The notes under the pieces are model-generated. The model saw only the letters and a list, made by a program, of their open reading frames with translations. It ran no database searches and was not told the DNA's origin. Shown here piece by piece: positions 6,993-39,292 of a DNA stretch of 64,000 bases (position 1 is the first letter of the stretch; every line of letters starts with the position of its first letter). Position numbers and translations under genes: made by a program. The stretch is taken from positions 248,001-312,000 of IMG/VR virus record IMGVR_UViG_3300032288_004964; one strand, written 5' to 3'.

Positions 6993-7078
6993 GCTACGGT
7001 ATGCAAACCGGAATAAGCGACCAGACTTTCAATCTGGACATCGAAAGATGTGTGCGGGTTCGAGCCCCGTCCGTAGTA
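6993..7078 (+). tRNA. tRNA with TTC (Glu) anticodon and long variable arm
   Basis: ccaga-CTTTCAA-tctgg; acatc-gaaa-gatgt V-arm; A73. Confidence 0.8.
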
Positions 7079-7081
7079 CAA

Positions 7082-8627: not shown

Positions 8628-8701
8628 AGGTGAGTAGCTTAGATGGTAAAAGCATGTGTCTTATACACACAAGATAGTGGGATCGTTACCCACCTCACCT
8701 A
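8628..8701 (+). tRNA. tRNA-Ile(TAT)
   Basis: tgtgt-CTTATAC-acaca; T-loop ATCGTTA. Confidence 0.85.
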
Positions 8702-14500: not shown

Positions 14501-14586
14501 TACTGTGTTGCCGTAGTGGCCGAACGGTCCAGACTGTTAATCTGGTGACGAATAGTCCAACGTAGGTTCGAATCCTACCACAGTAG
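14501..14586 (+). tRNA. tRNA-Asn(GTT) with long variable arm
   Basis: ccaga-CTGTTAA-tctgg; G73. Confidence 0.8.
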
Positions 14587-14591
14587 CAAAA

Positions 14592-15269: not shown

Positions 15270-15349
15270 GCTGATGTGGCACAGTGGCGACTGCACCAAC
15301 CTTGTAAGTTGGAACACAAACATCGGGGGTTCGAGTCCCTCCATCAGCT
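15270..15349 (+). tRNA. tRNA-Thr(TGT) with extended variable region
   Basis: ccaac-CTTGTAA-gttgg. Confidence 0.8.
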
Positions 15350-15356
15350 CAAAAAT

Positions 15357-15449: not shown

Positions 15450-15521
15450 TGCGATATAGCTTAATGGAAGAGCGGCTCCAGACATAGGGAGTTAGTCTTG
15501 GTTCGATTCCAGGTATCGCGA
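15450..15521 (+). tRNA. tRNA-Met-like with 8-nt anticodon loop (AGA-CAT-AG)
   Basis: gctcc-AGACATAG-ggagt; normal D and T arms. Confidence 0.6.
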
Positions 15522-15526
15522 CAAAT

Positions 15527-16464: not shown

Positions 16465-17922
16465 ATGAAAAATATTGTAACAAGAATTGCTCCTTCTCCA
16501 ACTGGTAAGTTTGTCCATTTAGGAAACTTAAGAACTTTACTTTATAATTACTTCCTTGCTAAAAGACACGGTGGTAAATTCCTTGTGCGTTTAGAAGATA
16601 CTGACCGTGACCGTTATACTCCAGAATTTCTACAATATTTTAAAGATACTTGTGATTGGTTAGGAATTGTACCTGATAATTCTTTTTGGAATCCAGATCC
16701 ATCAATTGGTTCATTTATTCAATCAGAAAGAGATTATTCTGACAAAGTTAAATTTCTATTAGATAATGGATTGGCTTATTATGCTTTTGATACAAAAGAT
16801 GATTTAGATATTTTAAAGTCTAAAGGTCTTAAATATGATGCAACCACTCGTATGTCTATGAATAACTCATTGACAAGACCTGATACTGATATTAATTCTG
16901 TTCCTTATGTTATTCGTTTTGCTGTTACACCAGATGTAGATATTACTTTTACAGATGCAATCTTAGGTGATATTACTATTAACACAAATACTTTAGATGA
17001 TAAGGTTTTAATTAAATCCAATGGTATTGGTTCTTATCATCTTTGTAATGTTTGTGATGATCATGATATGAAAGTTACTCATGTTCTTCGTGGACAAGAA
17101 TGGGTAAATTCTACTCCTTTTCATATTCTTATGTATAAAGCATTTGGTTGGGATATTCCTACTTTTGCTCACTTACCTCTAATTATGAATCCTGATGGTA
17201 AAGGTAAACTAGCAAAAAGAACGGCTGCTAAATATGGTATTCCTATTGCGCCACTTGGTTATACTGATGATAATGGAGTCTATATCCCAGGTTGGAAAGA
17301 TTTAGGTTATGATCCTAAGGCATTTATCAATTCACTTGCTTTAATTGGTTGGAATCCTGGTAATGATGTTGAAGTTATGTCCTTAGATGATATGATTAAT
17401 TCATTTTCATTAGACAGAGTTCATAAATCAGGTGCTCGTTTTGATATTGATAAAGCAAAATGGATTAACTCACACTATTTAAAGGCTACTGATAATAAAG
17501 ATTTAATTCCTTTTGTTAATATTGTGGATAATAGATATTCTAATGATAAATTAGATAAGATTATTACTTTAGCAAAAGATAGAGCTACTTTTAAGACAGA
17601 CTTAAATAATATTGTTGATTTGTTTTTTGATACACCTGTTATTACAGACTATTCAAAAATTGATGATAACTATATAAAAGTAATGTCTAGTTTTGTTGAT
17701 AATATTGACTCTGTTGATTTCAATGATACTGATAGTATTAAATTAACAATTTCTTCTATCTGTGATGGGTTTGGAATTAAGATTGGTAAAGTAATGCCTG
17801 GTTTGAGAATTGCTTTAGTTGGTGGAATAAGTGGACCAGATTTAATGACCACGATGTCAATTCTTGGTAAAGACCAAGTAAAATTGAGAATTCTTAACTC
17901 TACAAAAACAGTTACTGTATAA
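16465..17922 (+). CDS. gltX: Glutamyl-tRNA synthetase
   Basis: RIAPSPTG, HLGN (HIGH), RLEDTD, DDHDM-VTHVLRG, KLAKR. Confidence 0.92.
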   Translation: MKNIVTRIAPSPTGKFVHLGNLRTLLYNYFLAKRHGGKFLVRLEDTDRDRYTPEFLQYFKDTCDWLGIVPDNSFWNPDPSIGSFIQSERDYSDKVKFLLDNGLAYYAFDTKDDLDILKSKGLKYDATTRMSMNNSLTRPDTDINSVPYVIRFAVTPDVDITFTDAILGDITINTNTLDDKVLIKSNGIGSYHLCNVCDDHDMKVTHVLRGQEWVNSTPFHILMYKAFGWDIPTFAHLPLIMNPDGKGKLAKRTAAKYGIPIAPLGYTDDNGVYIPGWKDLGYDPKAFINSLALIGWNPGNDVEVMSLDDMINSFSLDRVHKSGARFDIDKAKWINSHYLKATDNKDLIPFVNIVDNRYSNDKLDKIITLAKDRATFKTDLNNIVDLFFDTPVITDYSKIDDNYIKVMSSFVDNIDSVDFNDTDSIKLTISSICDGFGIKIGKVMPGLRIALVGGISGPDLMTTMSILGKDQVKLRILNSTKTVTV

Positions 17923-23876: not shown

Positions 23877-25511
23877 ATGAATTTCATAGAAGAAAAAATA
23901 TTAGAAAAAGGAAATCTCGATAAGTTAAAACTTCGTTTTCCACCAGAACCAAATGGGGCTATACTAAACGATGGTAGAGTTGTCGGTGGTCTTCACTTAG
24001 GACATGCTAAATCCATTATACTAAATTTTGGATTAGCAGAAAAGTATAATGCTACATGTGTGTTAAGGTTTGATGATACAAATCCAACTACTGAAAGAAA
24101 AGAGTTTGTAGATTCAATGATTGAGGATATCAAATGGCTTGGTTATACTCCAAGTGAAATCAGATACACATCTGATTATTTTGATTTTCTTTATGAATGT
24201 GCTGTTACTTTAATTAAGAAAGGATTAGCTTATGTTGATGATTCAACATCTGAAGAAATTGCTAACTTAAAAGGAACTCCAACTTCAGTTGGTAAAGACT
24301 CACCTTATAAATCTAGAAGTATAGAAGAAAACTTAGACTTATTTAATAGAATGAGATTAGGTGAATTCTATGAAGGTTCTAAAATCTTGAGAGCCAATAT
24401 TGATATGACTTCTCCTAATATGATTTTAAGAGATCCGGTTCTTTACAGAATAATATCTAAGTCACATCACAGAACTGGTGATACTTGGAAGATTTATCCA
24501 ATGTATGACTTTGCTCATCCACTTTCAGATTATAAAGAAGGTATCACTGATTCCCTTTGTACTTTAGAATTTGAAGTTCATAGACCTTTATATATGTGGG
24601 TCTTAGAAAATTGTGATTTAGAAAATTCTTTACCAGAAGAAACTGAGTTTGCTCGTTTGAACATTGACTATACGGTTATGTCAAAGAGAAAACTAAAAAG
24701 ATTAGTTGAAGAAGGATTTGTTGATGGGTGGAATGATCCAAGAATGCCAACTATTTCTGGTTTAAGAAGAAGAGGTTTTACTCCAAACGCTATTAAAGAT
24801 TTCTGCGATAGAATTTCTGTTACCAGAAAAGAATCAGTTGTTTCTTATTTGCTTTTAGAAGAATGTTTAAGAACTGATTTGAATATAGTTACCAATAGAT
24901 TAATGGGTGTTATGGATCCAGTTAAGTTAGTTATTACTAATTGGGATAGCGGAACTGAAATGGTTGAAGTTGAAAATAATCCTGGCGATGAAAGTGCTGG
25001 AGTGAGAATGATTCCTTTTAGTGGTGAATTATTTATTGAAAGAGAAGATTTCAGAGAAGAAGCCAATAAAAAATTTCATAGATTGAAATTAGGTGGAGAA
25101 GTAAGACTAAAAGGAGCTTATGTTATTATGGCTAACGAAGTTATCAAAGATGAATTTGGGGAAATCACTGAGATCAGATGTACTTATGATCCTTTAACAA
25201 GATCGGGTATGACTTTTGAAAGAAAGATTAAAGGAACTATTCACTGGGTATCTGCTGAACACGGAGTTAGAATGGATGTAAATGAATATGATAGATTGTT
25301 CAATGATGAATCACCAGATAAAAATGAAGATGATTTTATCAATTATATCAACCCAGATTCACTTATAATTAATGATAAGGCAATCTTTGAACCTCACGTT
25401 TTAAACGTCAAGGCACCAGTTCAAATGATGAGAAAGGGGTATTATATTTTAGATACTGACGGTAAAAGTTTCAATAAAACGGTAAGTTTGAAAGAAGGTT
25501 GGGTAGGTTAA
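23877..25511 (+). CDS. glnS: Glutaminyl-tRNA synthetase
   Basis: RFPPEPNG, HLGH, RFDDTNP, YPMYDFAH, MSKRK, GWNDPRMPT. Confidence 0.95.
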   Translation: MNFIEEKILEKGNLDKLKLRFPPEPNGAILNDGRVVGGLHLGHAKSIILNFGLAEKYNATCVLRFDDTNPTTERKEFVDSMIEDIKWLGYTPSEIRYTSDYFDFLYECAVTLIKKGLAYVDDSTSEEIANLKGTPTSVGKDSPYKSRSIEENLDLFNRMRLGEFYEGSKILRANIDMTSPNMILRDPVLYRIISKSHHRTGDTWKIYPMYDFAHPLSDYKEGITDSLCTLEFEVHRPLYMWVLENCDLENSLPEETEFARLNIDYTVMSKRKLKRLVEEGFVDGWNDPRMPTISGLRRRGFTPNAIKDFCDRISVTRKESVVSYLLLEECLRTDLNIVTNRLMGVMDPVKLVITNWDSGTEMVEVENNPGDESAGVRMIPFSGELFIEREDFREEANKKFHRLKLGGEVRLKGAYVIMANEVIKDEFGEITEIRCTYDPLTRSGMTFERKIKGTIHWVSAEHGVRMDVNEYDRLFNDESPDKNEDDFINYINPDSLIINDKAIFEPHVLNVKAPVQMMRKGYYILDTDGKSFNKTVSLKEGWVG

Positions 25512-30395: not shown

Positions 30396-31478
30396 ATGAA
30401 AATAAAAAAGTTTAATCAGTTTAATACATCTGAATGGATTGGTCCTCTTGAAATATTGGATATAAAAGATAATATTGTCTTTACTAACTTTGGTAATTTC
30501 TCTAATAAATCAGGAAATAAACTTACTATTGGTTATTCTTATATTTTAAGAGTTGTTGGTAATGAAATAATTGATACGGGAATGAGTTGTGTGGATTTAG
30601 TTGTTCTAGTTAAATCTACAAAAGGTTATAAAGTTCTTTCTATTAAAAGAGGTAGACCGCCATTTGTAGGTATGTGGGCTAATCCAGGTGGGAATATTGA
30701 TGAAGGTGAGAAACCTTTAGATGCTGCTGTTAGAGAATTAGAAGAAGAAACTGGATTGGTTATACCTGGTAAAAGTTTTAATTATGTTGGATCATTTGAT
30801 AAAGAGTTTAGAGATCCTCGTAATAAAAATTGTGTAAGTCACGCTTTTAGTATTGTTCTTGATGAACAACCTTCTGTTAAAGCAGGTGATGATGCTACAG
30901 AGTGTACTTGGAATGATGTAGATGAAAATGGTAATGTAAAAGTAGATATGGCTTTTGACCATTCTGAAATAATTAAAAAATCTGTAAATATGTTAAATTT
31001 AAAAAATGTTAAAGAACCATTTGTTATTGTCTTGGTTGGACCACCATTATCTGGTAAAACAACTTGGATTAAAAATAATTATCCAACAACTGAGGTGATT
31101 AGTCGTGATGAGATTGTTATGGAAGTTTATGGTTCTAAAAACTATACAGAGGCATTTAAAAATGTTGACCAAAAAGAAGTAGATAAAGTTTTACATGAAA
31201 GACTTGTTGATGCTAACTTGAAAAAGAAAAATGTTATTATTGACATGACTCATATGGCTTCTAAACGCAGAAAACATAATCTAAATTACTTTTCTGATGA
31301 TTATTACAAGATGGCTGTTATTTTCCCTATTCTTTCAGATGATGAATATGAAAGAAGAAATAAAAAAAGAATTGAAGAAGAGAATAAAGATCTTCCAATG
31401 AATATTGTAAAAAGTATGATTTCATCATATCAACCTATCAGTCCAGAGGAAGGCTTTGATAAAGTTATCTCAATTTAA
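30396..31478 (+). CDS. NUDIX hydrolase fused to a P-loop (polynucleotide-kinase-like) domain
   Basis: GGNIDEGE...AAVRELEEETG NUDIX box; GPPLSGKT Walker A followed by ISRD. Confidence 0.8.
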   Translation: MKIKKFNQFNTSEWIGPLEILDIKDNIVFTNFGNFSNKSGNKLTIGYSYILRVVGNEIIDTGMSCVDLVVLVKSTKGYKVLSIKRGRPPFVGMWANPGGNIDEGEKPLDAAVRELEEETGLVIPGKSFNYVGSFDKEFRDPRNKNCVSHAFSIVLDEQPSVKAGDDATECTWNDVDENGNVKVDMAFDHSEIIKKSVNMLNLKNVKEPFVIVLVGPPLSGKTTWIKNNYPTTEVISRDEIVMEVYGSKNYTEAFKNVDQKEVDKVLHERLVDANLKKKNVIIDMTHMASKRRKHNLNYFSDDYYKMAVIFPILSDDEYERRNKKRIEEENKDLPMNIVKSMISSYQPISPEEGFDKVISI

Positions 31479-33411: not shown

Positions 33412-33610
33412 AACTTCCTTTAATTTTTTTATAGAAATTTTACAAAAAATTTGGTGAGATTAAAAATCCTCCTTATCTTTGTATAAGAAATCAGAAATGA
33501 TTTTAGTTCATTGAAATAGTTTATTGAAAATATACCAAAACGGTGAGAGATATTAAAAGTAGTACACTAAGTACGAGCTCATATGGGAGGCTGTCACCGT
33601 CCGCAAATTT

Positions 33611-33695
33611 GAGGAAGTTCCAGAGTGGTCAAATGGGGCTGTGTAGTAACACGGCTGACTTTTAGTCTTCAGAGGTTCAAATCCTTTCTTTCTCA
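33611..33695 (+). tRNA. tRNA-Tyr-like with 8-nt anticodon loop
   Basis: gctgt-GTAGTAAC-acggc; long V-arm; A73. Confidence 0.6.
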
Positions 33696-33785
33696 CAAAA
33701 AATATTTTGAAAAACATTTGGTAGAATAAAAAAAAGTTTCTATCTTTGTAAAACAAAATTAAAAGGTATTATATAAAAAACATAT

Positions 33786-33861
33786 TGCGGGAGGGTGAAA
33801 CGGAAAATCATTCCAGGCTCATAACCTGACGAGATACTTGGTTCGACTCCAAGTCCCGCTA
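33786..33861 (+). tRNA. Initiator-type tRNA-Met(CAT)
   Basis: cagg-CTCATAA-cctg; 1:72 mismatch. Confidence 0.75.
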
Positions 33862-33895
33862 CTAAAAAAAGTTTTTATAAATTTTTTACAAAAGA

Positions 33896-33976
33896 TTTGG
33901 ATAATTAAAAAAAAGTTTCTATCTTTGTAAAACAAAATTAAAAACAAAACTATAAAAATAGTTCTTTAACATATTG
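33896..33976 (+). promoter_or_regulatory. Host-type promoter followed by a boxA-like element
   Basis: tttggataatt...tatctttgta, then gttctttaacatattg; the promoter is nearly duplicated at ~33717. Confidence 0.65.
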
Positions 33977-33979
33977 AAA

Positions 33980-34840
33980 TTACAGAAATAATGACTTCGG
34001 TCATTAAAGTAAGTAGGGCGGCTTATAGTCCATAAATAATCTCTGAAAGGAGGATAAAGTGATCACAAATGCTAAATGTGATTGCGGCTTGACCGAAAGG
34101 TTGAGCTCGGGTAAGCGAGTGGAATACCATTATTCCTGAGTAGCCGAGGGTAACACTGTAGGCGAAATGGTTTAGTGATTAGGCGATGTAGATCGTCTGA
34201 TTGACTTCGGAAGAAGAATAGGAATAATCCATAGGAATCTTTGCAAGAAGTGGTGACCCACCAGTTATCATCATTGCGAATTCCAACTTGAGAGGTATCT
34301 CAAAGTCGAAAGACAATTTAGTGTACAGGTGGTGCTGTTACTAAACACTAAACTGACTACCAAGTCGGTGACCTTGCTAAGGTGAGGTCTGGTGAAGATA
34401 TCTTAAAGAGTTGTGATGGAGGCATCACACGGAGTAGTCTAGTATTCTTGAGGCCAAAAGCTTTGGGAACTAAGAGATAACCACTACTTCGACAAAATCT
34501 ACAGCACTAAAATTTACTTTTTGACGTAAAAATTAAAACTTAAATCGAAAGTGTTATCTAGTTACTGATAGAAAGGTACCTACTTAGTTATGGGTTGTCC
34601 ATAGCCACATAAGTCCGAAAGACTGGTGTGATTTTACCGAAAAGCTTATAGGGGGTCGAATCCCGAACTAGCCTGCGAGGGTTGGATAAGTAGAGTAAGT
34701 AGAGAGTATTCAGTGACTCAAGGGGTGGTTAGTCTAACTAACCGGTACTGACAAGATACCATTCAAAAGATGGTGGATAGATTTGGGAATACATAATCCA
34801 AACAAAGACTTGTCATATTAAGATGTAATCTCAGTCTTTT
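33980..34840 (+). ncRNA. Large structured ncRNA, GOLLD-like
   Basis: ~850 nt with no ORF in the track, higher GC than flanks, many GNRA/UUCG-capped hairpins, flanked by tRNAs; family name is from size and context only. Confidence 0.6.
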
Positions 34841-34844
34841 ATTT

Positions 34845-34920
34845 GGTCAGTTCGTCTAGCGGCATTCAGGACGGATATCTATTCAGATATCAAACATTGG
34901 TTCGAATCCAATACTGACTA
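34845..34920 (+). tRNA. tRNA-Glu-like with 8-nt anticodon loop
   Basis: gatat-CTATTCAG-atatc; normal D and T arms. Confidence 0.6.
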
Positions 34921-34999
34921 CTAAGTTTTCGTAGTGGTTAACTTACTCCGAAAGGGGGGTCTGTCAATGACAGTGTGACTACCTCAAAGTCACACATAT

Positions 35000-35099
35000 G
35001 GCCCGTTAGTCTACAGGACTCGCAAGAGAATCAGATTTATCTGATTAGGACGGTCAACTTTTCGGTTGATAGATATTGGTTCGAATCCAATACGGGCTA
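35000..35099 (+). tRNA. tRNA-Glu-like with 8-nt anticodon loop and two hairpins in the D-loop
   Basis: gtcaa-CTTTTCGG-ttgat; nested in a 10-bp stem 34925/35124. Confidence 0.55.
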
Positions 35100-35133: not shown

Positions 35134-35162
35134 ACCCACTAATTATTTTAGTGGGTTTTTTG
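35134..35162 (+). terminator. Intrinsic terminator ending the ncRNA operon
   Basis: acccactaa...ttagtgggt plus U tract. Confidence 0.75.
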
Positions 35163-35211
35163 TTTTAAATAAACTTTTTGCTTATATTTGTATATTAAAA
35201 ATAATTAAAAT

Positions 35212-35676
35212 ATGAAAGAGTTATTTGAACTAACACAGGAACTAGAAGTTCTAAAATACATTTTTCCAAAAATTATTGTCGCAACAATCTGTGGTTCTAT
35301 CATCGGATGGGAAAGAGAGCGTAAAAATAAAGTCGCTGGTTTAAGAACCAATGTCTTAATCTGTGTAGGATCTGCGATATTTACCATTGTTTCCTTCTTA
35401 TGTTCTAAATACTACAACATATCTGACCCAACAAGAATTCTATCAACTATAGTTACCGGTATTGGTTTCTTAGGTGGTGGGGTTATTATGAAACATGATG
35501 ATAGAATTGTTGGTATGACATCAGCAGCATTTATTTGGACCATTTCAGCAATTGGTATACTTTGTGGTATGGGTTTTATCATATCACCTATTCTCCTAAC
35601 TATTGGTTTACTAACCGTATCACTTTATTTTGAAAAAGTAGAAAAATATATTAAAAAAGATATAAACAAGAAATGA
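35212..35676 (+). CDS. MgtC/SapB family membrane protein
   Basis: IGWERE...AGLRTN, DPTRI, GIGFLGGG motifs. Confidence 0.85.
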   Translation: MKELFELTQELEVLKYIFPKIIVATICGSIIGWERERKNKVAGLRTNVLICVGSAIFTIVSFLCSKYYNISDPTRILSTIVTGIGFLGGGVIMKHDDRIVGMTSAAFIWTISAIGILCGMGFIISPILLTIGLLTVSLYFEKVEKYIKKDINKK

Positions 35677-37156: not shown

Positions 37157-39292
37157 ATGATAAATGAAAAATTAGATGGTAGTGAATACCTAAAAAATCT
37201 TCCTGATGTTAAAGCATCATTAGAAGATGATGAGGACGAAGATAAGTCTTTTAGTTCTAAAAAACCAGACAGTAAGTCTAAGACTCCCGTTTTAGATACT
37301 TATAGCCGTGATTTAACCAAAATGGCTGAAGAAGGAAAACTAGACCCTATTGTTGGTAGAGAAAAAGAAATTGAAAGAGTTTCTCAAATTCTTTCACGTA
37401 GAAAGAAAAACAACCCAATTTTAATTGGTGAACCAGGTGTTGGTAAATCTTCAATTGCTGAAGGATTAGCACTTCGTATTATCCAAAGAAAAGTAAGTAG
37501 AATTCTTTTTAACAAAAGAGTTGTAATGTTAGACTTGGCTTCAATGGTTGCTGGTACTAAATACCGTGGTCAATTTGAAGAAAGAGTTAAGGCTTTAATG
37601 GGAGAACTTGAAAAAGAACCAAATGTAATTCTTTTCATTGATGAGATTCATACTATGATTGGTGCTGGTGGAGCATCAGGATCATTAGATGCCTCTAATA
37701 TGTTCAAACCCGCTTTAGCAAGAGGTGAAATCCAAATCATTGGTGCTACTACTTTGGATGAATACCGTAAACACATTGAGAAAGATGGAGCTTTAGAAAG
37801 AAGATTTCAGAAAGTTATGGTTGAGCCAGCTTCTCCGGAAGAAACTTTACAAATCATTTCTAACATCAAAGACAAGTATGAGTCGCATCACAATGTTACT
37901 TATACTGAAGAAGCTATCAAAGCTTGTGTTGATTTAACTTCTCGTTATATGAATGATAGATTCCTTCCAGATAAAGCTATTGATGCTTTAGATGAGGCTG
38001 GGTCTCGTGTTCATATCTCAAACATTGTAGTTCCTAAAGAAATCACTGATATTGAAAAGAAAATTGTAGATATCAAGGATAAAAAGAATGAAGTAATTCG
38101 TTCTCAAAAGTATGAAGAAGCTGCTAAGTTAAGAGATGTTGAAAGACAATTAAATGAATCTTTAGAATCAGCTAGAAAAGCTTGGGAAGAAGACTCTTCT
38201 AAAAACAGACAAACTGTTACAGAAGATAATGTTGCTGAAGTTGTTTCAATGATGACTGGAATTCCTTTACAAAAAGTAACTCTTAATGAAACTAACAAGT
38301 TAGGTAAAATGCAAGAGTCTATTATTGGTAAGGTAATTGGTCAAGATGATGCTGTTAAAAAGATTGTTAAAGCAATTCAAAGAGGTCGTGTTGGTCTTAA
38401 AGATCCAAACAAACCAATTGGTTCATTTATGTTCTTAGGACCAACTGGTGTAGGTAAAACACAATTAGCTAAGGTATTGGCTAAGTATCTATTTGATTCA
38501 GAAGATTCTTTAATTAGAATTGATATGTCTGAATATATGGAGAAATTCGCAGTATCTCGTTTGATTGGAGCTCCTCCAGGATATGTTGGACATGATGAAG
38601 GTGGTCAATTAACTGAAAAAGTTAGACGCAAACCTTATTCAGTTGTTCTTCTTGATGAGATTGAGAAGGCTCATCCTGAAGTGTTCAACTTATTACTTCA
38701 AGTTTTAGATGATGGTCAATTAACTGATTCATTGGGTAGAAAAGTTAATTTCAAAAACACTATCATTATTATGACTTCTAATACAGGTTCACGTCAATTA
38801 AAAGACTTTGGAACTGGAGTTGGTTTCTCCACTAAGAACAGAGAAAGTAAAGGACAAGAAGAATCAAATGCTGTTATTGATAAGGAATTAAAAAAGAAAT
38901 TCGCACCAGAATTCTTAAACCGTATTGATGATGTGGTTATGTTTAACTCTCTTGTAAAAGAAGATATTAACAAGATTATCTCTATTGAGTTAGAAAAGTT
39001 AGTAGGCCGTGTCCAAGAAATGGAATACAACTTAGATATCACATCAGAAGCTGTTGATTATATTGCATCTGAAGGATTTGACCCAGAGTATGGAGCAAGA
39101 CCTTTGAAGAGAGCAATTCAAAGATTAGTTGAAGATGTTCTAACCGAAGAGATTATTCAAAGTAATCCGGATAAAGGATCTAAACTTTCTTTAAGTTATA
39201 ACAAAGAAGAAGAAAAGATGGTTGTTCAAATTACCCCACCTGAATCTAAAGTTGCTAAGAAAAGAGCACCTAAGAAAAAAGATGATAAGTAA
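37157..39292 (+). CDS. clpC: ClpC-type AAA+ chaperone lacking the N-terminal Clp-repeat domain
   Basis: Two Walker A motifs ([16 protein letters not shown]); UVR middle domain YEEAAKLRD; GVGF ClpP-docking loop. Confidence 0.85.

What the first reader, a model, noticed from the sequence alone, without database searches (positions are those of the whole stretch)
33611..35099. Four tRNAs with 8-nt anticodon loops, extra base always 5' of the anticodon
Loops: GTA-GTA-AC (Tyr body, 33611), CTA-TTC-AG (Glu body, 34845), CTT-TTC-GG (Glu body, 35000) and AGA-CAT-AG (Met-like, 15450). In the first three the arm can zip to 7 bp plus a 4-nt loop. Expanded loops are the hallmark of +1 frameshift suppressor tRNAs; alternatively these are non-decoding decoys. 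Three flank the large ncRNA, lack a leader peptide, and correspond to the Tyr/Glu pair of cluster 1.
Basis: partly seen in the sequence, partly recalled or inferred. Interest (0 to 1): 0.7.

Follow-up and report, generated by a model that had tools for sequence, protein, structure and literature searches.

The report
Remodelled tRNA look-alikes flanking GOLLD RNA
A huge freshwater phage surrounds its giant GOLLD RNA with tRNA-Glu and tRNA-Tyr look-alikes whose anticodon arm is one base too long. The extra base is conserved in related phages, but the RNAs look like non-decoding tRNA mimics rather than frameshift suppressors.

Summary
ARAGORN and hand parsing confirm 8-nt anticodon loops at 33611 (Tyr body), 34845 and 35000 (Glu bodies) and 15450.

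The large ncRNA between them is GOLLD (Rfam, 270 bits). The window comes from a 385-kb phage with Bacteroidetes-type promoters.

The three GOLLD-flanking loops are not indel artefacts. About 30 Glu-type copies in 16 phage or metagenome contigs, and 5 Tyr-type orthologs, keep the extra base over covarying stems. In five GOLLD phages, all 11 Glu-type copies lie at the GOLLD locus.

Three things changed in these arms:
- Positions 32 and 38 became Watson-Crick partners, so the arm can close to 6-7 bp.
- The inserted base varies freely (A/U/C).
- UUC or GUA stays invariant.

Some copies carry 23-50-nt D-loop hairpins. In two phages a copy is replaced by an acceptor/T minihelix.

The genome is 90.5% coding in the standard code and has about 3,600 in-frame GAA-A/U sites.

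I read them as non-decoding tRNA mimics co-transcribed with GOLLD. Frameshift suppression is unlikely.

The 15450 tRNA is a separate case: its orthologs are tRNA-Ile(UAU) with 7-nt loops.

The parts
33450..33483 (+). Bacteroidetes-type promoter (TTTG-N-TAnnTTTG) ahead of the Tyr-type element
   Evidence: The pattern occurs 9 times in the window against 0.73 expected.
33611..33696 (+). Tyr-type tRNA look-alike ('Tyr8'). Loop GTAGTAAC at 33643-33650, long variable arm, A73, no encoded CCA.
   Evidence: ARAGORN agta. Rfam tRNA scores only 20 bits. Five orthologs keep the 8-nt loop over covarying stems.
33717..33750 (+). Second copy of the promoter, ahead of tRNA-Met
33786..33862 (+). tRNA-Met(CAT) with a normal 7-nt loop and a U1:U72 mismatch. 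This is the conserved upstream neighbour of GOLLD.
   Evidence: ARAGORN. Rfam tRNA 35.7 bits. A tRNA-Met holds the same position in L001, L005, L008, L012, L176 and L178.
33896..33929 (+). Third promoter copy, ahead of GOLLD
33940..34837 (+). GOLLD RNA. The 5' limit is approximate. The Rfam-modelled 3' domain is 34430-34837.
   Evidence: RF02032 at 270.1 bits, E 2e-77. Metatranscriptome contigs lie almost only on 34009-34880.
34845..34921 (+). Glu-type tRNA look-alike no. 1 ('Glu8'). It starts 7 nt after the last GOLLD position. Loop CTATTCAG at 34879-34886.
   Evidence: ARAGORN attc. Rfam tRNA 41.6 bits. Family alignment A3.
34922..34999 (+). Conserved spacer RNA: an invariant 19-nt 5' block (AGTTTTCGTAGTGGTTAAC) followed by three covarying hairpins
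   Evidence: Alignment A1 of 8 phages. 20 predicted pairs, 10 of them with compensatory changes.
35000..35099 (+). Glu-type look-alike no. 2. A 34-nt D-loop insertion forms two hairpins, one capped by a GCAA loop. Anticodon loop CTTTTCGG at 35058-35065.
   Evidence: Hand and script parse. Not found by ARAGORN or Rfam. Orthologs occur in L001, L008, L010, L033 and L178.
35134..35165 (+). Intrinsic terminator. It is the only terminator-like site on the + strand after the GOLLD promoter (the other + strand match, 33637-33656, is the Tyr8 anticodon arm itself).
   Evidence: 9-bp stem followed by a T run.
15450..15522 (+). Separate case: an AUA-family (Ile-type) tRNA. Its open 8-nt loop AGACATAG (15480-15487) has no U33 and cannot zip.
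   Evidence: ARAGORN acat. Orthologs have 7-nt loops with TAT. No indel in 3 independent metagenomes, and one relative lacks the gene.
16465..17922 (+). Context: phage-encoded glutamyl-tRNA synthetase
   Evidence: TIGR00464 gltX_bact at 396 bits, above its cut-off. PF00749 hit.

Best explanation
The three elements at 33611, 34845 and 35000 are tRNA-Tyr- and tRNA-Glu-derived RNAs. They belong to the phage's GOLLD locus and no longer serve as ordinary decoders.

Shown:
- GOLLD, Glu8 no. 1, a conserved spacer RNA and Glu8 no. 2 lie between one consensus promoter and one terminator.
- Tyr8 and a tRNA-Met lie just upstream, each behind its own copy of that promoter.
- In these RNAs the acceptor stem, D stem and T arm are intact.
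- The anticodon arm has been rebuilt. One base is inserted after U33, and positions 32 and 38 have changed into a Watson-Crick pair. The arm can therefore close to 6-7 bp, capped by N-UUC or N-GUA.

Inferred:
- The intact acceptor/T half makes them substrates for RNase P, RNase Z and the CCA-adding enzyme. Cleavage there would set the 3' end of GOLLD, which ends 7 nt before Glu8 no. 1, and would release stable tRNA-sized RNAs.
- The invariant UUC or GUA, the Glu-type D arm and the Tyr-type long variable arm with A73 are the elements that GluRS and TyrRS recognise in studied bacteria. The RNAs therefore probably still bind, and may be charged by, tRNA-Glu/Tyr-specific proteins without entering decoding. 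Candidates are the phage's own GluRS, host modification enzymes or anticodon-directed nucleases. That would make them mimics or decoys.

Whether they are cut off or stay attached to the GOLLD particle is open.

The 15450 tRNA is unrelated to this. It is a lineage-specific variant of an Ile(AUA)-type tRNA.
For: GOLLD identity.

One transcription unit: promoters at 33450, 33717 and 33896, and a single + strand terminator at 35134.

Conservation of the 8-nt arm:
- 22 of 26 Glu-type copies parse best with 8 nt.
- There are 17 distinct arm sequences.
- In alignment A3, 91% of cells pair in the 7-bp model against 66% in shuffles, and 6 of 7 pairs show compensatory changes.
- The 32:38 pair is C:G 15 times and U:A once, never unpaired.
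- Tyr type: 5 orthologs, 100% of cells paired, 4 pairs with compensatory changes. The inserted base is A/U/U/U/C and GUA is invariant.

Closed form: favoured by 3.2-4.5 kcal/mol.

Linkage to GOLLD:
- In G000, LR745206, LR756502, G409 and G410, all 11 Glu8 copies in genomes of 312-642 kb lie at the GOLLD locus.
- The order Tyr8, tRNA-Met, GOLLD, Glu8 recurs in L001, L176 and L178.

Anticodon arm dispensable, top half kept:
- In L005 and L012, Glu8 no. 1 is replaced by an acceptor/T minihelix.
- D-loop insertions are 23-50 nt.
- Acceptor stems are 7/7 in the parsed copies.

In other GOLLD clades an ordinary tRNA (Phe, Ser or Leu) starts just after the GOLLD 3' end.

The phage encodes a GluRS and a CCA-adding enzyme.

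Freshwater metatranscriptome contigs cover GOLLD and stop near its 3' end.

Literature: GOLLD sits in tRNA arrays and sometimes embeds a tRNA (10.1101/2024.12.08.627333; PMC6582537; PMC12990946).
Against: - No RNA-end, charging or ribosome data exist. The RNase P/Z step and the 'non-decoding' status are inferences.
- One metatranscriptome contig (34709-34880, depth 2) bridges GOLLD and Glu8 no. 1. An uncut form, or contaminating DNA, therefore exists.
- A Watson-Crick 32:38 pair alone does not rule out decoding. The U33:R37 'pair' cannot be told apart from ordinary U33/purine-37 conservation.
- A pure processing signal would not need an invariant UUC or GUA.
- Glu8 copies also occur without GOLLD. 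Complete jumbo phages G001 and G003 have none by Rfam. L033 has tRNA-Met, the spacer and Glu8 without GOLLD in its fragment. Three Pirellulales chromosomes also carry one. The function therefore cannot be only GOLLD maturation.
- No tRNA-Glu-directed nuclease is known to me for these hosts.
Confidence: 0.5

Rival explanations
1. They are working triplet decoders for GAA and UAC. Their loop has been reshaped so that a host anticodon-directed nuclease or modification-dependent defence cannot act on them, making them nuclease-resistant spare tRNAs.
For: - All tertiary and identity elements are kept: GG in the D loop, a TTCGA T loop, the Glu-type D arm, and the Tyr-type long arm with A73.
- The anticodon triplet is invariant.
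- The insertion sits right at the wobble position.
- The phage also carries its own GluRS.
- It has been proposed that phage tRNAs escape anticodon nucleases through loop mutations (PMC10264068).
- An 8-nt-loop mitochondrial tRNA is on record as not known to cause frameshifting (PMC5009743).
Against: - D-loop insertions of 23-50 nt occur in half of the copies.
- One copy is replaced by a minihelix without an anticodon arm.
- Anticodon stems are degenerate in the G001-G003 phages, with 3-4 of 5 pairs.
- The closed hairpin is favoured by about 4 kcal/mol over weak A-U stems.
- The phage already has three canonical tRNA-Glu and two tRNA-Tyr.
- No RtcB-type repair gene is present.
Confidence: 0.2
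2. They are +1 frameshift suppressor (quadruplet-reading) tRNAs that the phage uses to express genes needing a +1 shift at GAAN or UACN.
For: - The 8-nt loops are real, conserved and sit behind consensus promoters.
- From my own knowledge, extra bases on the 5' side of the anticodon are found in classical suppressors such as sufJ.
Against: - The would-be fourth base varies among orthologs: A/U in the Glu type, A/U/C in the Tyr type.
- Positions 32 and 38 have become complementary.
- The genome reads as 400 ORFs and 90.5% coding in the standard code, so no obvious need for shifting appears.
- It holds 2,197 GAAA, 1,425 GAAT and 447 TACT in frame, about 9 GAA-A/U sites per gene.
- The review PMC5009743 states that none of the natural tRNAs with non-standard loops is known to mediate frameshifting.
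Confidence: 0.07
3. They are decaying tRNA pseudogenes or assembly artefacts with no function.
For: - Rfam scores are low: 20 bits for Tyr8, and nothing for Glu8 no. 2.
- Some copies in G001-G003 have degenerate stems.
- 15450 alone fits this picture: its 8-nt loop is lineage-specific, its orthologs have 7 nt, and one relative lacks the gene.
Against: - The same loop architecture persists across 16 contigs with compensatory stem changes.
- The anticodon triplet is invariant, synteny with GOLLD is conserved, and each unit has a consensus promoter.
- Independent assemblies agree.
Confidence: 0.04

Closest known systems
GOLLD RNA in tRNA arrays, with neighbouring or embedded tRNAs (Lactobacillales prophages, Mycobacterium arrays, env-38 downstream of tRNA-Met)
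   Same: GOLLD is flanked by tRNA genes, and a tRNA-Met lies directly upstream, as reported for env-38 (10.1101/2024.12.08.627333; PMC6582537; PMC12990946). In several other GOLLD clades a tRNA starts just after the GOLLD 3' end.
   Different: Here the flanking elements are not ordinary tRNAs. They have a conserved extra loop base, a closed 32:38 pair, D-loop hairpins and a conserved spacer RNA. I found no report of this in the papers I could search.
tRNA-like 3'-end processing elements of long non-coding RNAs (mascRNA of MALAT1; recalled from my own knowledge)
   Same: A tRNA-shaped element sits directly 3' of a long structured RNA. Its acceptor/T half is intact and its anticodon arm is non-canonical. 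RNase P cleavage 5' of it would make the long RNA's 3' end.
   Different: Those examples are eukaryotic, and cleavage is not shown here. Our elements keep an invariant anticodon triplet and synthetase identity features, and they also occur away from GOLLD.
+1 frameshift suppressor tRNAs with 8-nt loops (suf alleles; engineered quadruplet decoders)
   Same: There is one extra nucleotide in the anticodon loop, on the 5' side of the anticodon.
   Different: Suppressors are rare mutant alleles or engineered molecules. Here the extra base is variable, 32:38 is Watson-Crick, and no target genes are evident.
Natural tRNAs with non-standard loop sizes (yeast mitochondrial tRNA, tRNAs of a phage, a glass-sponge mitochondrial tRNA), as listed in PMC5009743
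   Same: These are natural, conserved 8-nt or larger loops. None is known to mediate frameshifting.
   Different: The yeast mitochondrial tRNA is the working decoder for its codons, from my own knowledge. Ours are extra copies beside canonical isoacceptors, and several have features unlikely to fit the ribosome.
Phage tRNAs with anticodon-loop substitutions proposed to evade host anticodon nucleases (PMC10264068)
   Same: Phage-encoded duplicates of host-type isoacceptors are altered specifically in the anticodon loop.
   Different: That paper's text does not contain the word 'insertion'; from my own memory it concerns base substitutions in 7-nt loops. Here there is an insertion plus loop closure.

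Membership tests
Canonical decoding tRNA | Cloverleaf with a 7-bp acceptor stem, D stem, 5-bp anticodon stem, and T arm with a TTCRA loop | tested here: met
   ARAGORN structures. Script parse of all copies.
Canonical decoding tRNA | 7-nt anticodon loop with non-Watson-Crick positions 32 and 38 | tested here: not met
   The loops have 8 nt. 32:38 is C:G, U:A or G:C in all 21 aligned arms. The phage's own canonical tRNA-Glu and tRNA-Tyr have CTTTCAA, CTTTCAC or CTGTAAA.
Canonical decoding tRNA | Reaches the Rfam tRNA (RF00005) gathering score of 29 bits | tested here: inconclusive
   In the region search, Glu8 no. 1 scores 41.6 bits, Tyr8 scores 20.0 bits and Glu8 no. 2 has no match. 15450 scores 44.9 bits in the whole-window gathering run, which did not list Glu8 no. 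1.
+1 frameshift suppressor tRNA | Expanded (8-nt) anticodon loop | tested here: met
+1 frameshift suppressor tRNA | A defined fourth base that matches the shift sites | tested here: not met
   The inserted base is A or U in Glu8 and A, U or C in Tyr8 orthologs.
+1 frameshift suppressor tRNA | Genes that need a +1 shift at the cognate codon | tested here: inconclusive
   400 ORFs and 90.5% coding in the standard code, with about 3,600 in-frame GAA-A/U sites. No gene-by-gene homology test for split genes was done.
+1 frameshift suppressor tRNA | Measured frameshift activity | not testable with these tools
   Needs reporter assays or proteomics.
GOLLD RNA (RF02032) | Covariance-model score above the gathering threshold of 150 bits | tested here: met
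   270.1 bits at 34430-34837 with the full model 1-416. Relatives score 275-291 bits.
tRNA-like 3'-end processing element | Sits directly 3' of the long RNA and has an intact acceptor/T minihelix | tested here: met
   A 7-nt U-rich gap separates 34837 from 34845. The acceptor is 7/7 and the T stem 5/5. A minihelix-only version occurs in L005 and L012.
tRNA-like 3'-end processing element | Cleavage by RNase P at its 5' end in vivo | tested here: inconclusive
   Metatranscriptome contigs stop near the GOLLD 3' end, but one low-depth contig bridges the junction. Contigs give no true RNA ends.

The most novel reading that the evidence does not exclude
Glu8 and Tyr8 are dedicated partners of the GOLLD nanocage. 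They would be chargeable but non-decoding tRNA mimics, made from the same locus, that the 14-mer cage carries, stores or presents. Possible roles are capturing GluRS or TyrRS, or shielding tRNA-shaped cargo from host nucleases. That would give GOLLD its first concrete molecular partner. The GNRA-capped hairpins in their D loops could serve as docking elements.
Probability: 0.15. Interest if true: 0.85.

Novelty: new variant of a known kind. Interest (0 to 1): 0.6.

Why it matters
GOLLD has had no known function since 2009. Recent cryo-EM work shows that it forms a closed RNA cage and proposes phage tRNAs as possible cargo. This lineage of huge phages ties GOLLD to a specific, conserved and clearly non-standard set of tRNA-Glu and tRNA-Tyr look-alikes, alongside a phage GluRS. 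That yields direct tests: are these RNAs cut from GOLLD, are they charged, and do they bind the cage? It also adds a conserved natural class of tRNA-derived RNAs with an extra loop base. The same tRNA-Glu loop recurs in unrelated phages and in three Pirellulales chromosomes, which suggests a repeatable structural solution whose purpose is unknown.

Tried and rejected
1. Sequencing indel. Rejected for all four loops: independent assemblies agree.

2. Glu8 as purely a GOLLD appendage. Rejected:
- Copies exist in complete jumbo phages without a GOLLD match.
- L033 has tRNA-Met, the spacer and Glu8 without GOLLD.
- Three Pirellulales chromosomes carry a copy after clpP1-clpP2, beside a canonical tRNA-Glu.
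- Only the starting genome matched among 401 Planctomycetota sampled.

3. Strict co-occurrence with a phage GluRS. Rejected: G003 has 5 copies and no class-Ic synthetase.

4. Use as donors for glutamyl-tRNA-dependent enzymes encoded by the phage. No GluTR, cyclodipeptide synthase or LanB-type dehydratase was found. The LanB search had no positive control.

5. RNA repair gene as a sign of tRNA-cleavage conflict. No RtcB was found.

6. Pairing between the spacer's invariant block and the GOLLD strand TAACCACTAC (34478-34487). There are 10 complementary bases in the window. However, the GOLLD motif is conserved whether or not a spacer is present, and two spacer-bearing loci break the pairing. The idea is not supported.

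7. Literature searches for a prior description of these loops found none. Pope et al. 2014 (PMC3958112) could not be read. The reference list of PMC5009743 is not held, so I could not identify the phage it mentions.

8. A viral-contig scan for Tyr8 gave nothing. The metagenome scan gave three orthologs.
Full report
**Where the window comes from.** The window is bases 248001-312000 of a 385-kb IMG/VR virus record estimated 95% complete. It has 28.7% G+C and reads as 400 ORFs, 90.5% coding, in the standard code. The Bacteroidetes promoter consensus TTTG-N-TAnnTTTG occurs 9 times against 0.73 expected. The closest public records are the 635-kb and 642-kb uncultured phages LR745206 and LR756502. 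Near-identical DNA occurs in freshwater, lake and groundwater metagenomes.

**The observation.**
- ARAGORN reports 29 tRNAs in the window. Three have a 4-base 'anticodon': 15450 (acat), 33611 (agta) and 34845 (attc).
- The element at 35000 escapes ARAGORN and Rfam because of a 34-nt D-loop insertion. It still parses as a complete cloverleaf with loop CTTTTCGG.
- The ncRNA between them is GOLLD: RF02032, 270 bits, 34430-34837.

**Anatomy of the locus.**
- Three near-identical consensus promoters, at 33450, 33717 and 33896, precede Tyr8, a tRNA-Met and GOLLD respectively.
- After GOLLD come a 7-nt U-rich gap and Glu8 no. 1.
- A 78-nt spacer follows. Its first 19 nt are invariant in 8 phages, and its three hairpins covary.
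- Then come Glu8 no. 2 and the only + strand terminator downstream of the GOLLD promoter, at 35134.
- GOLLD and the two Glu8 elements therefore form one predicted transcription unit of about 1.2 kb.

**Conservation of the Glu-type arm.**
- A GOLLD-motif scan and a Glu8-motif scan of IMG/VR, together with the two phage records and a metagenome scan, gave about 30 Glu-type copies in 16 contigs.
- 22 of 26 copies parse best with an 8-nt loop. Two have the 7-nt loop CTTTTCA, and two have degenerate stems.
- The loop reads C/U-U-N-U-U-C-R-G/A over at least 13 different stems.
- In the alignment of 16 distinct arms, 91% of cells pair in a 7-bp model against 66% in shuffles. Six of 7 pairs show compensatory changes.
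- The 32:38 pair is C:G 15 times and U:A once, and is never unpaired.

**Conservation of the Tyr-type arm.**
- Five Tyr-type orthologs are known: the window, LR745206 and three metagenome contigs.
- They share G-U-N-G-U-A-A-C, with N being A, U, U, U or C. Pairing is 100% and four pairs have compensatory changes.
- The extra base is therefore selected for, its identity is not, and the anticodon triplet is invariant.

**Linkage to GOLLD.**
- In five GOLLD-bearing phages of 312-642 kb, all 11 Glu8 copies in the whole genome lie at the GOLLD locus.
- The order Tyr8, tRNA-Met, GOLLD, Glu8 recurs in LR745206 and in two metagenome contigs.
- In other GOLLD clades an ordinary tRNA-Phe, -Ser or -Leu begins just after the GOLLD 3' end. 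In some clades no tRNA follows.
- Published work already notes that GOLLD lies in tRNA arrays, follows a tRNA-Met in env-38 and can embed a tRNA. It also proposes tRNAs as possible cage cargo (10.1101/2024.12.08.627333; PMC6582537; PMC12990946).

**Signs that the anticodon arm no longer decodes.**
- Positions 32 and 38, which are non-Watson-Crick in the phage's own canonical tRNA-Glu and tRNA-Tyr, have become complementary.
- The closed form is favoured by 3.2-4.5 kcal/mol. The A-U-rich stems are barely stable with an open 8-nt loop.
- Half of the copies carry a D-loop insertion of 23-50 nt, several with GNRA-capped hairpins.
- In L005 and L012 the first Glu8 is replaced by an acceptor/T minihelix without an anticodon arm.
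- In the G001-G003 phages some anticodon stems have only 3-4 pairs while acceptor stems stay 7/7.
- The same loop motif is kept even in copies with large D-loop insertions. This argues that the loop is read by a protein rather than by a codon.

**Against frameshift suppression.**
- The would-be fourth base varies among orthologs.
- The genome shows no obvious need for shifting.
- It contains 2,197 GAAA, 1,425 GAAT, 447 TACT and 514 ATGT in frame.
- The review PMC5009743 notes that natural tRNAs with non-standard loops, including some in a phage, are not known to mediate frameshifting.
- This is an argument, not a measurement.

**What limits the processing-signal idea.**
- Glu8 copies occur in complete jumbo phages with no GOLLD match.
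- L033 has tRNA-Met, the spacer and Glu8 without GOLLD in its fragment.
- L036, a phage contig, carries a tRNA-Glu with G73 and an encoded CCA and the loop CTTTTCAG.
- Three Pirellulales genomes carry a chromosomal paralog after clpP1-clpP2, beside a canonical tRNA-Glu. Only the starting genome matched among 401 Planctomycetota sampled.
- The same loop on at least three different tRNA-Glu bodies suggests a repeatable solution with a function of its own.

**Context genes.**
- The phage encodes GluRS (16465-17922), GlnRS (23877-25511) and a CCA-adding enzyme, but no TyrRS.
- LR745206 and LR756502 also encode GluRS and GlnRS. G003 has five Glu8 copies and neither enzyme.
- No GluTR, cyclodipeptide synthase, LanB-type dehydratase or RtcB was found.

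**Expression.**
- Contigs from four freshwater metatranscriptomes lie almost only on 34009-34880, many from diverged GOLLD relatives. The flanks are nearly bare.
- One low-depth contig (34709-34880) bridges GOLLD and Glu8 no. 1.
- Contigs give neither direction nor true RNA ends. This shows that GOLLD-like RNA is present in RNA libraries and little more.

**The 15450 tRNA.**
- Its orthologs at the same array position in LR756502 and LR745206 have 7-nt loops with anticodon TAT.
- The window also has a canonical tRNA-Ile(TAT) at 8628.
- Its loop AGACATAG lacks U33 and cannot zip.
- Three independent metagenomes reproduce it without an indel, and one relative lacks the gene.
- It is a real, lineage-specific variant of an AUA-family tRNA, possibly decaying. 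It is not part of the GOLLD set.

**Verdict.**
- The finding is real and conserved.
- Its most likely meaning is a set of non-decoding tRNA-Glu and tRNA-Tyr mimics tied to GOLLD (confidence 0.5).
- Nuclease-resistant decoders are the main rival (0.2).
- Frameshift suppression is unlikely (0.07).

Noticed in passing
window 16465-17922 and 23877-25511; G000 383124-383492: The phage encodes a bacterial-type GluRS, a GlnRS placed right after its two tRNA-Gln genes, and a CCA-adding enzyme. No TyrRS/TrpRS family hit was found.
   Followed up: partly
window 6993-7079, 14501-14587, 15270-15350 (also G000 245428-245513): Several isoacceptors that normally have short variable loops (Glu, Asn, Thr, Lys) exist in a second copy of 81-87 nt. 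Glu 6993 has a stem-forming long variable arm in ARAGORN's drawing; I did not inspect the other structures. The Asn-type copy has an 85%-identical homolog annotated 'tRNA-OTHER' in Cellulophaga phage phi4:1.
   Followed up: no
G000 370132-370204 (outside the window): A tRNA with anticodon CTA, which would read TAG, is present. The standard code still gives 90.5% coding, and 33 of 400 ORFs end in TAG, so the bulk of the genome shows no recoding.
   Followed up: no
window 34922-34999: A conserved spacer RNA lies between the two Glu-type elements. Its 19-nt block AGTTTTCGTAGTGGTTAAC is invariant in 8 phages and resembles a tRNA-Glu D arm. Three covarying hairpins follow. The spacer also occurs without GOLLD (L033).
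   Followed up: partly
window 33484-33500; L002 about 1548-1562; L033 about 8107-8093 (- strand): Transcripts from the repeated promoter begin with a conserved small hairpin, AATCA-GAAA-TGATT, capped by a GNRA loop.
   Followed up: no
window 35020-35046; L033, L010, L178 D-loop insertions: The D-loop insertions of the second Glu-type element contain GNRA-capped hairpins (CTC-GCAA-GAG, CCC-GTAA-GGG). Motifs of this kind often dock onto receptors in large RNAs.
   Followed up: no
L173 1494-1569, L174 1494-1567, L175 1483-1557: Three Pirellulales genomes carry a second, chromosomal tRNA-Glu with the 8-nt loop CTTTTCAG or CTTTTCGG and a G1:U72 pair. In the two loci whose neighbours I annotated (L173, L174) it sits directly after two clpP genes. 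It exists beside a canonical tRNA-Glu.
   Followed up: partly
L037 2226-2900 (LR756502): An ORF with HNH-endonuclease-like sequence features sits inside the tRNA array, at the place where the window has tRNA-Leu followed by 15450.
   Followed up: no
window 30396-31478 and 37157-39292: Neighbouring genes include a NUDIX plus P-loop kinase (AAA_33) fusion and a two-domain Clp-type AAA+ ATPase. An MgtC-family gene (35212-35676) follows the terminator here and in LR756502.
   Followed up: no
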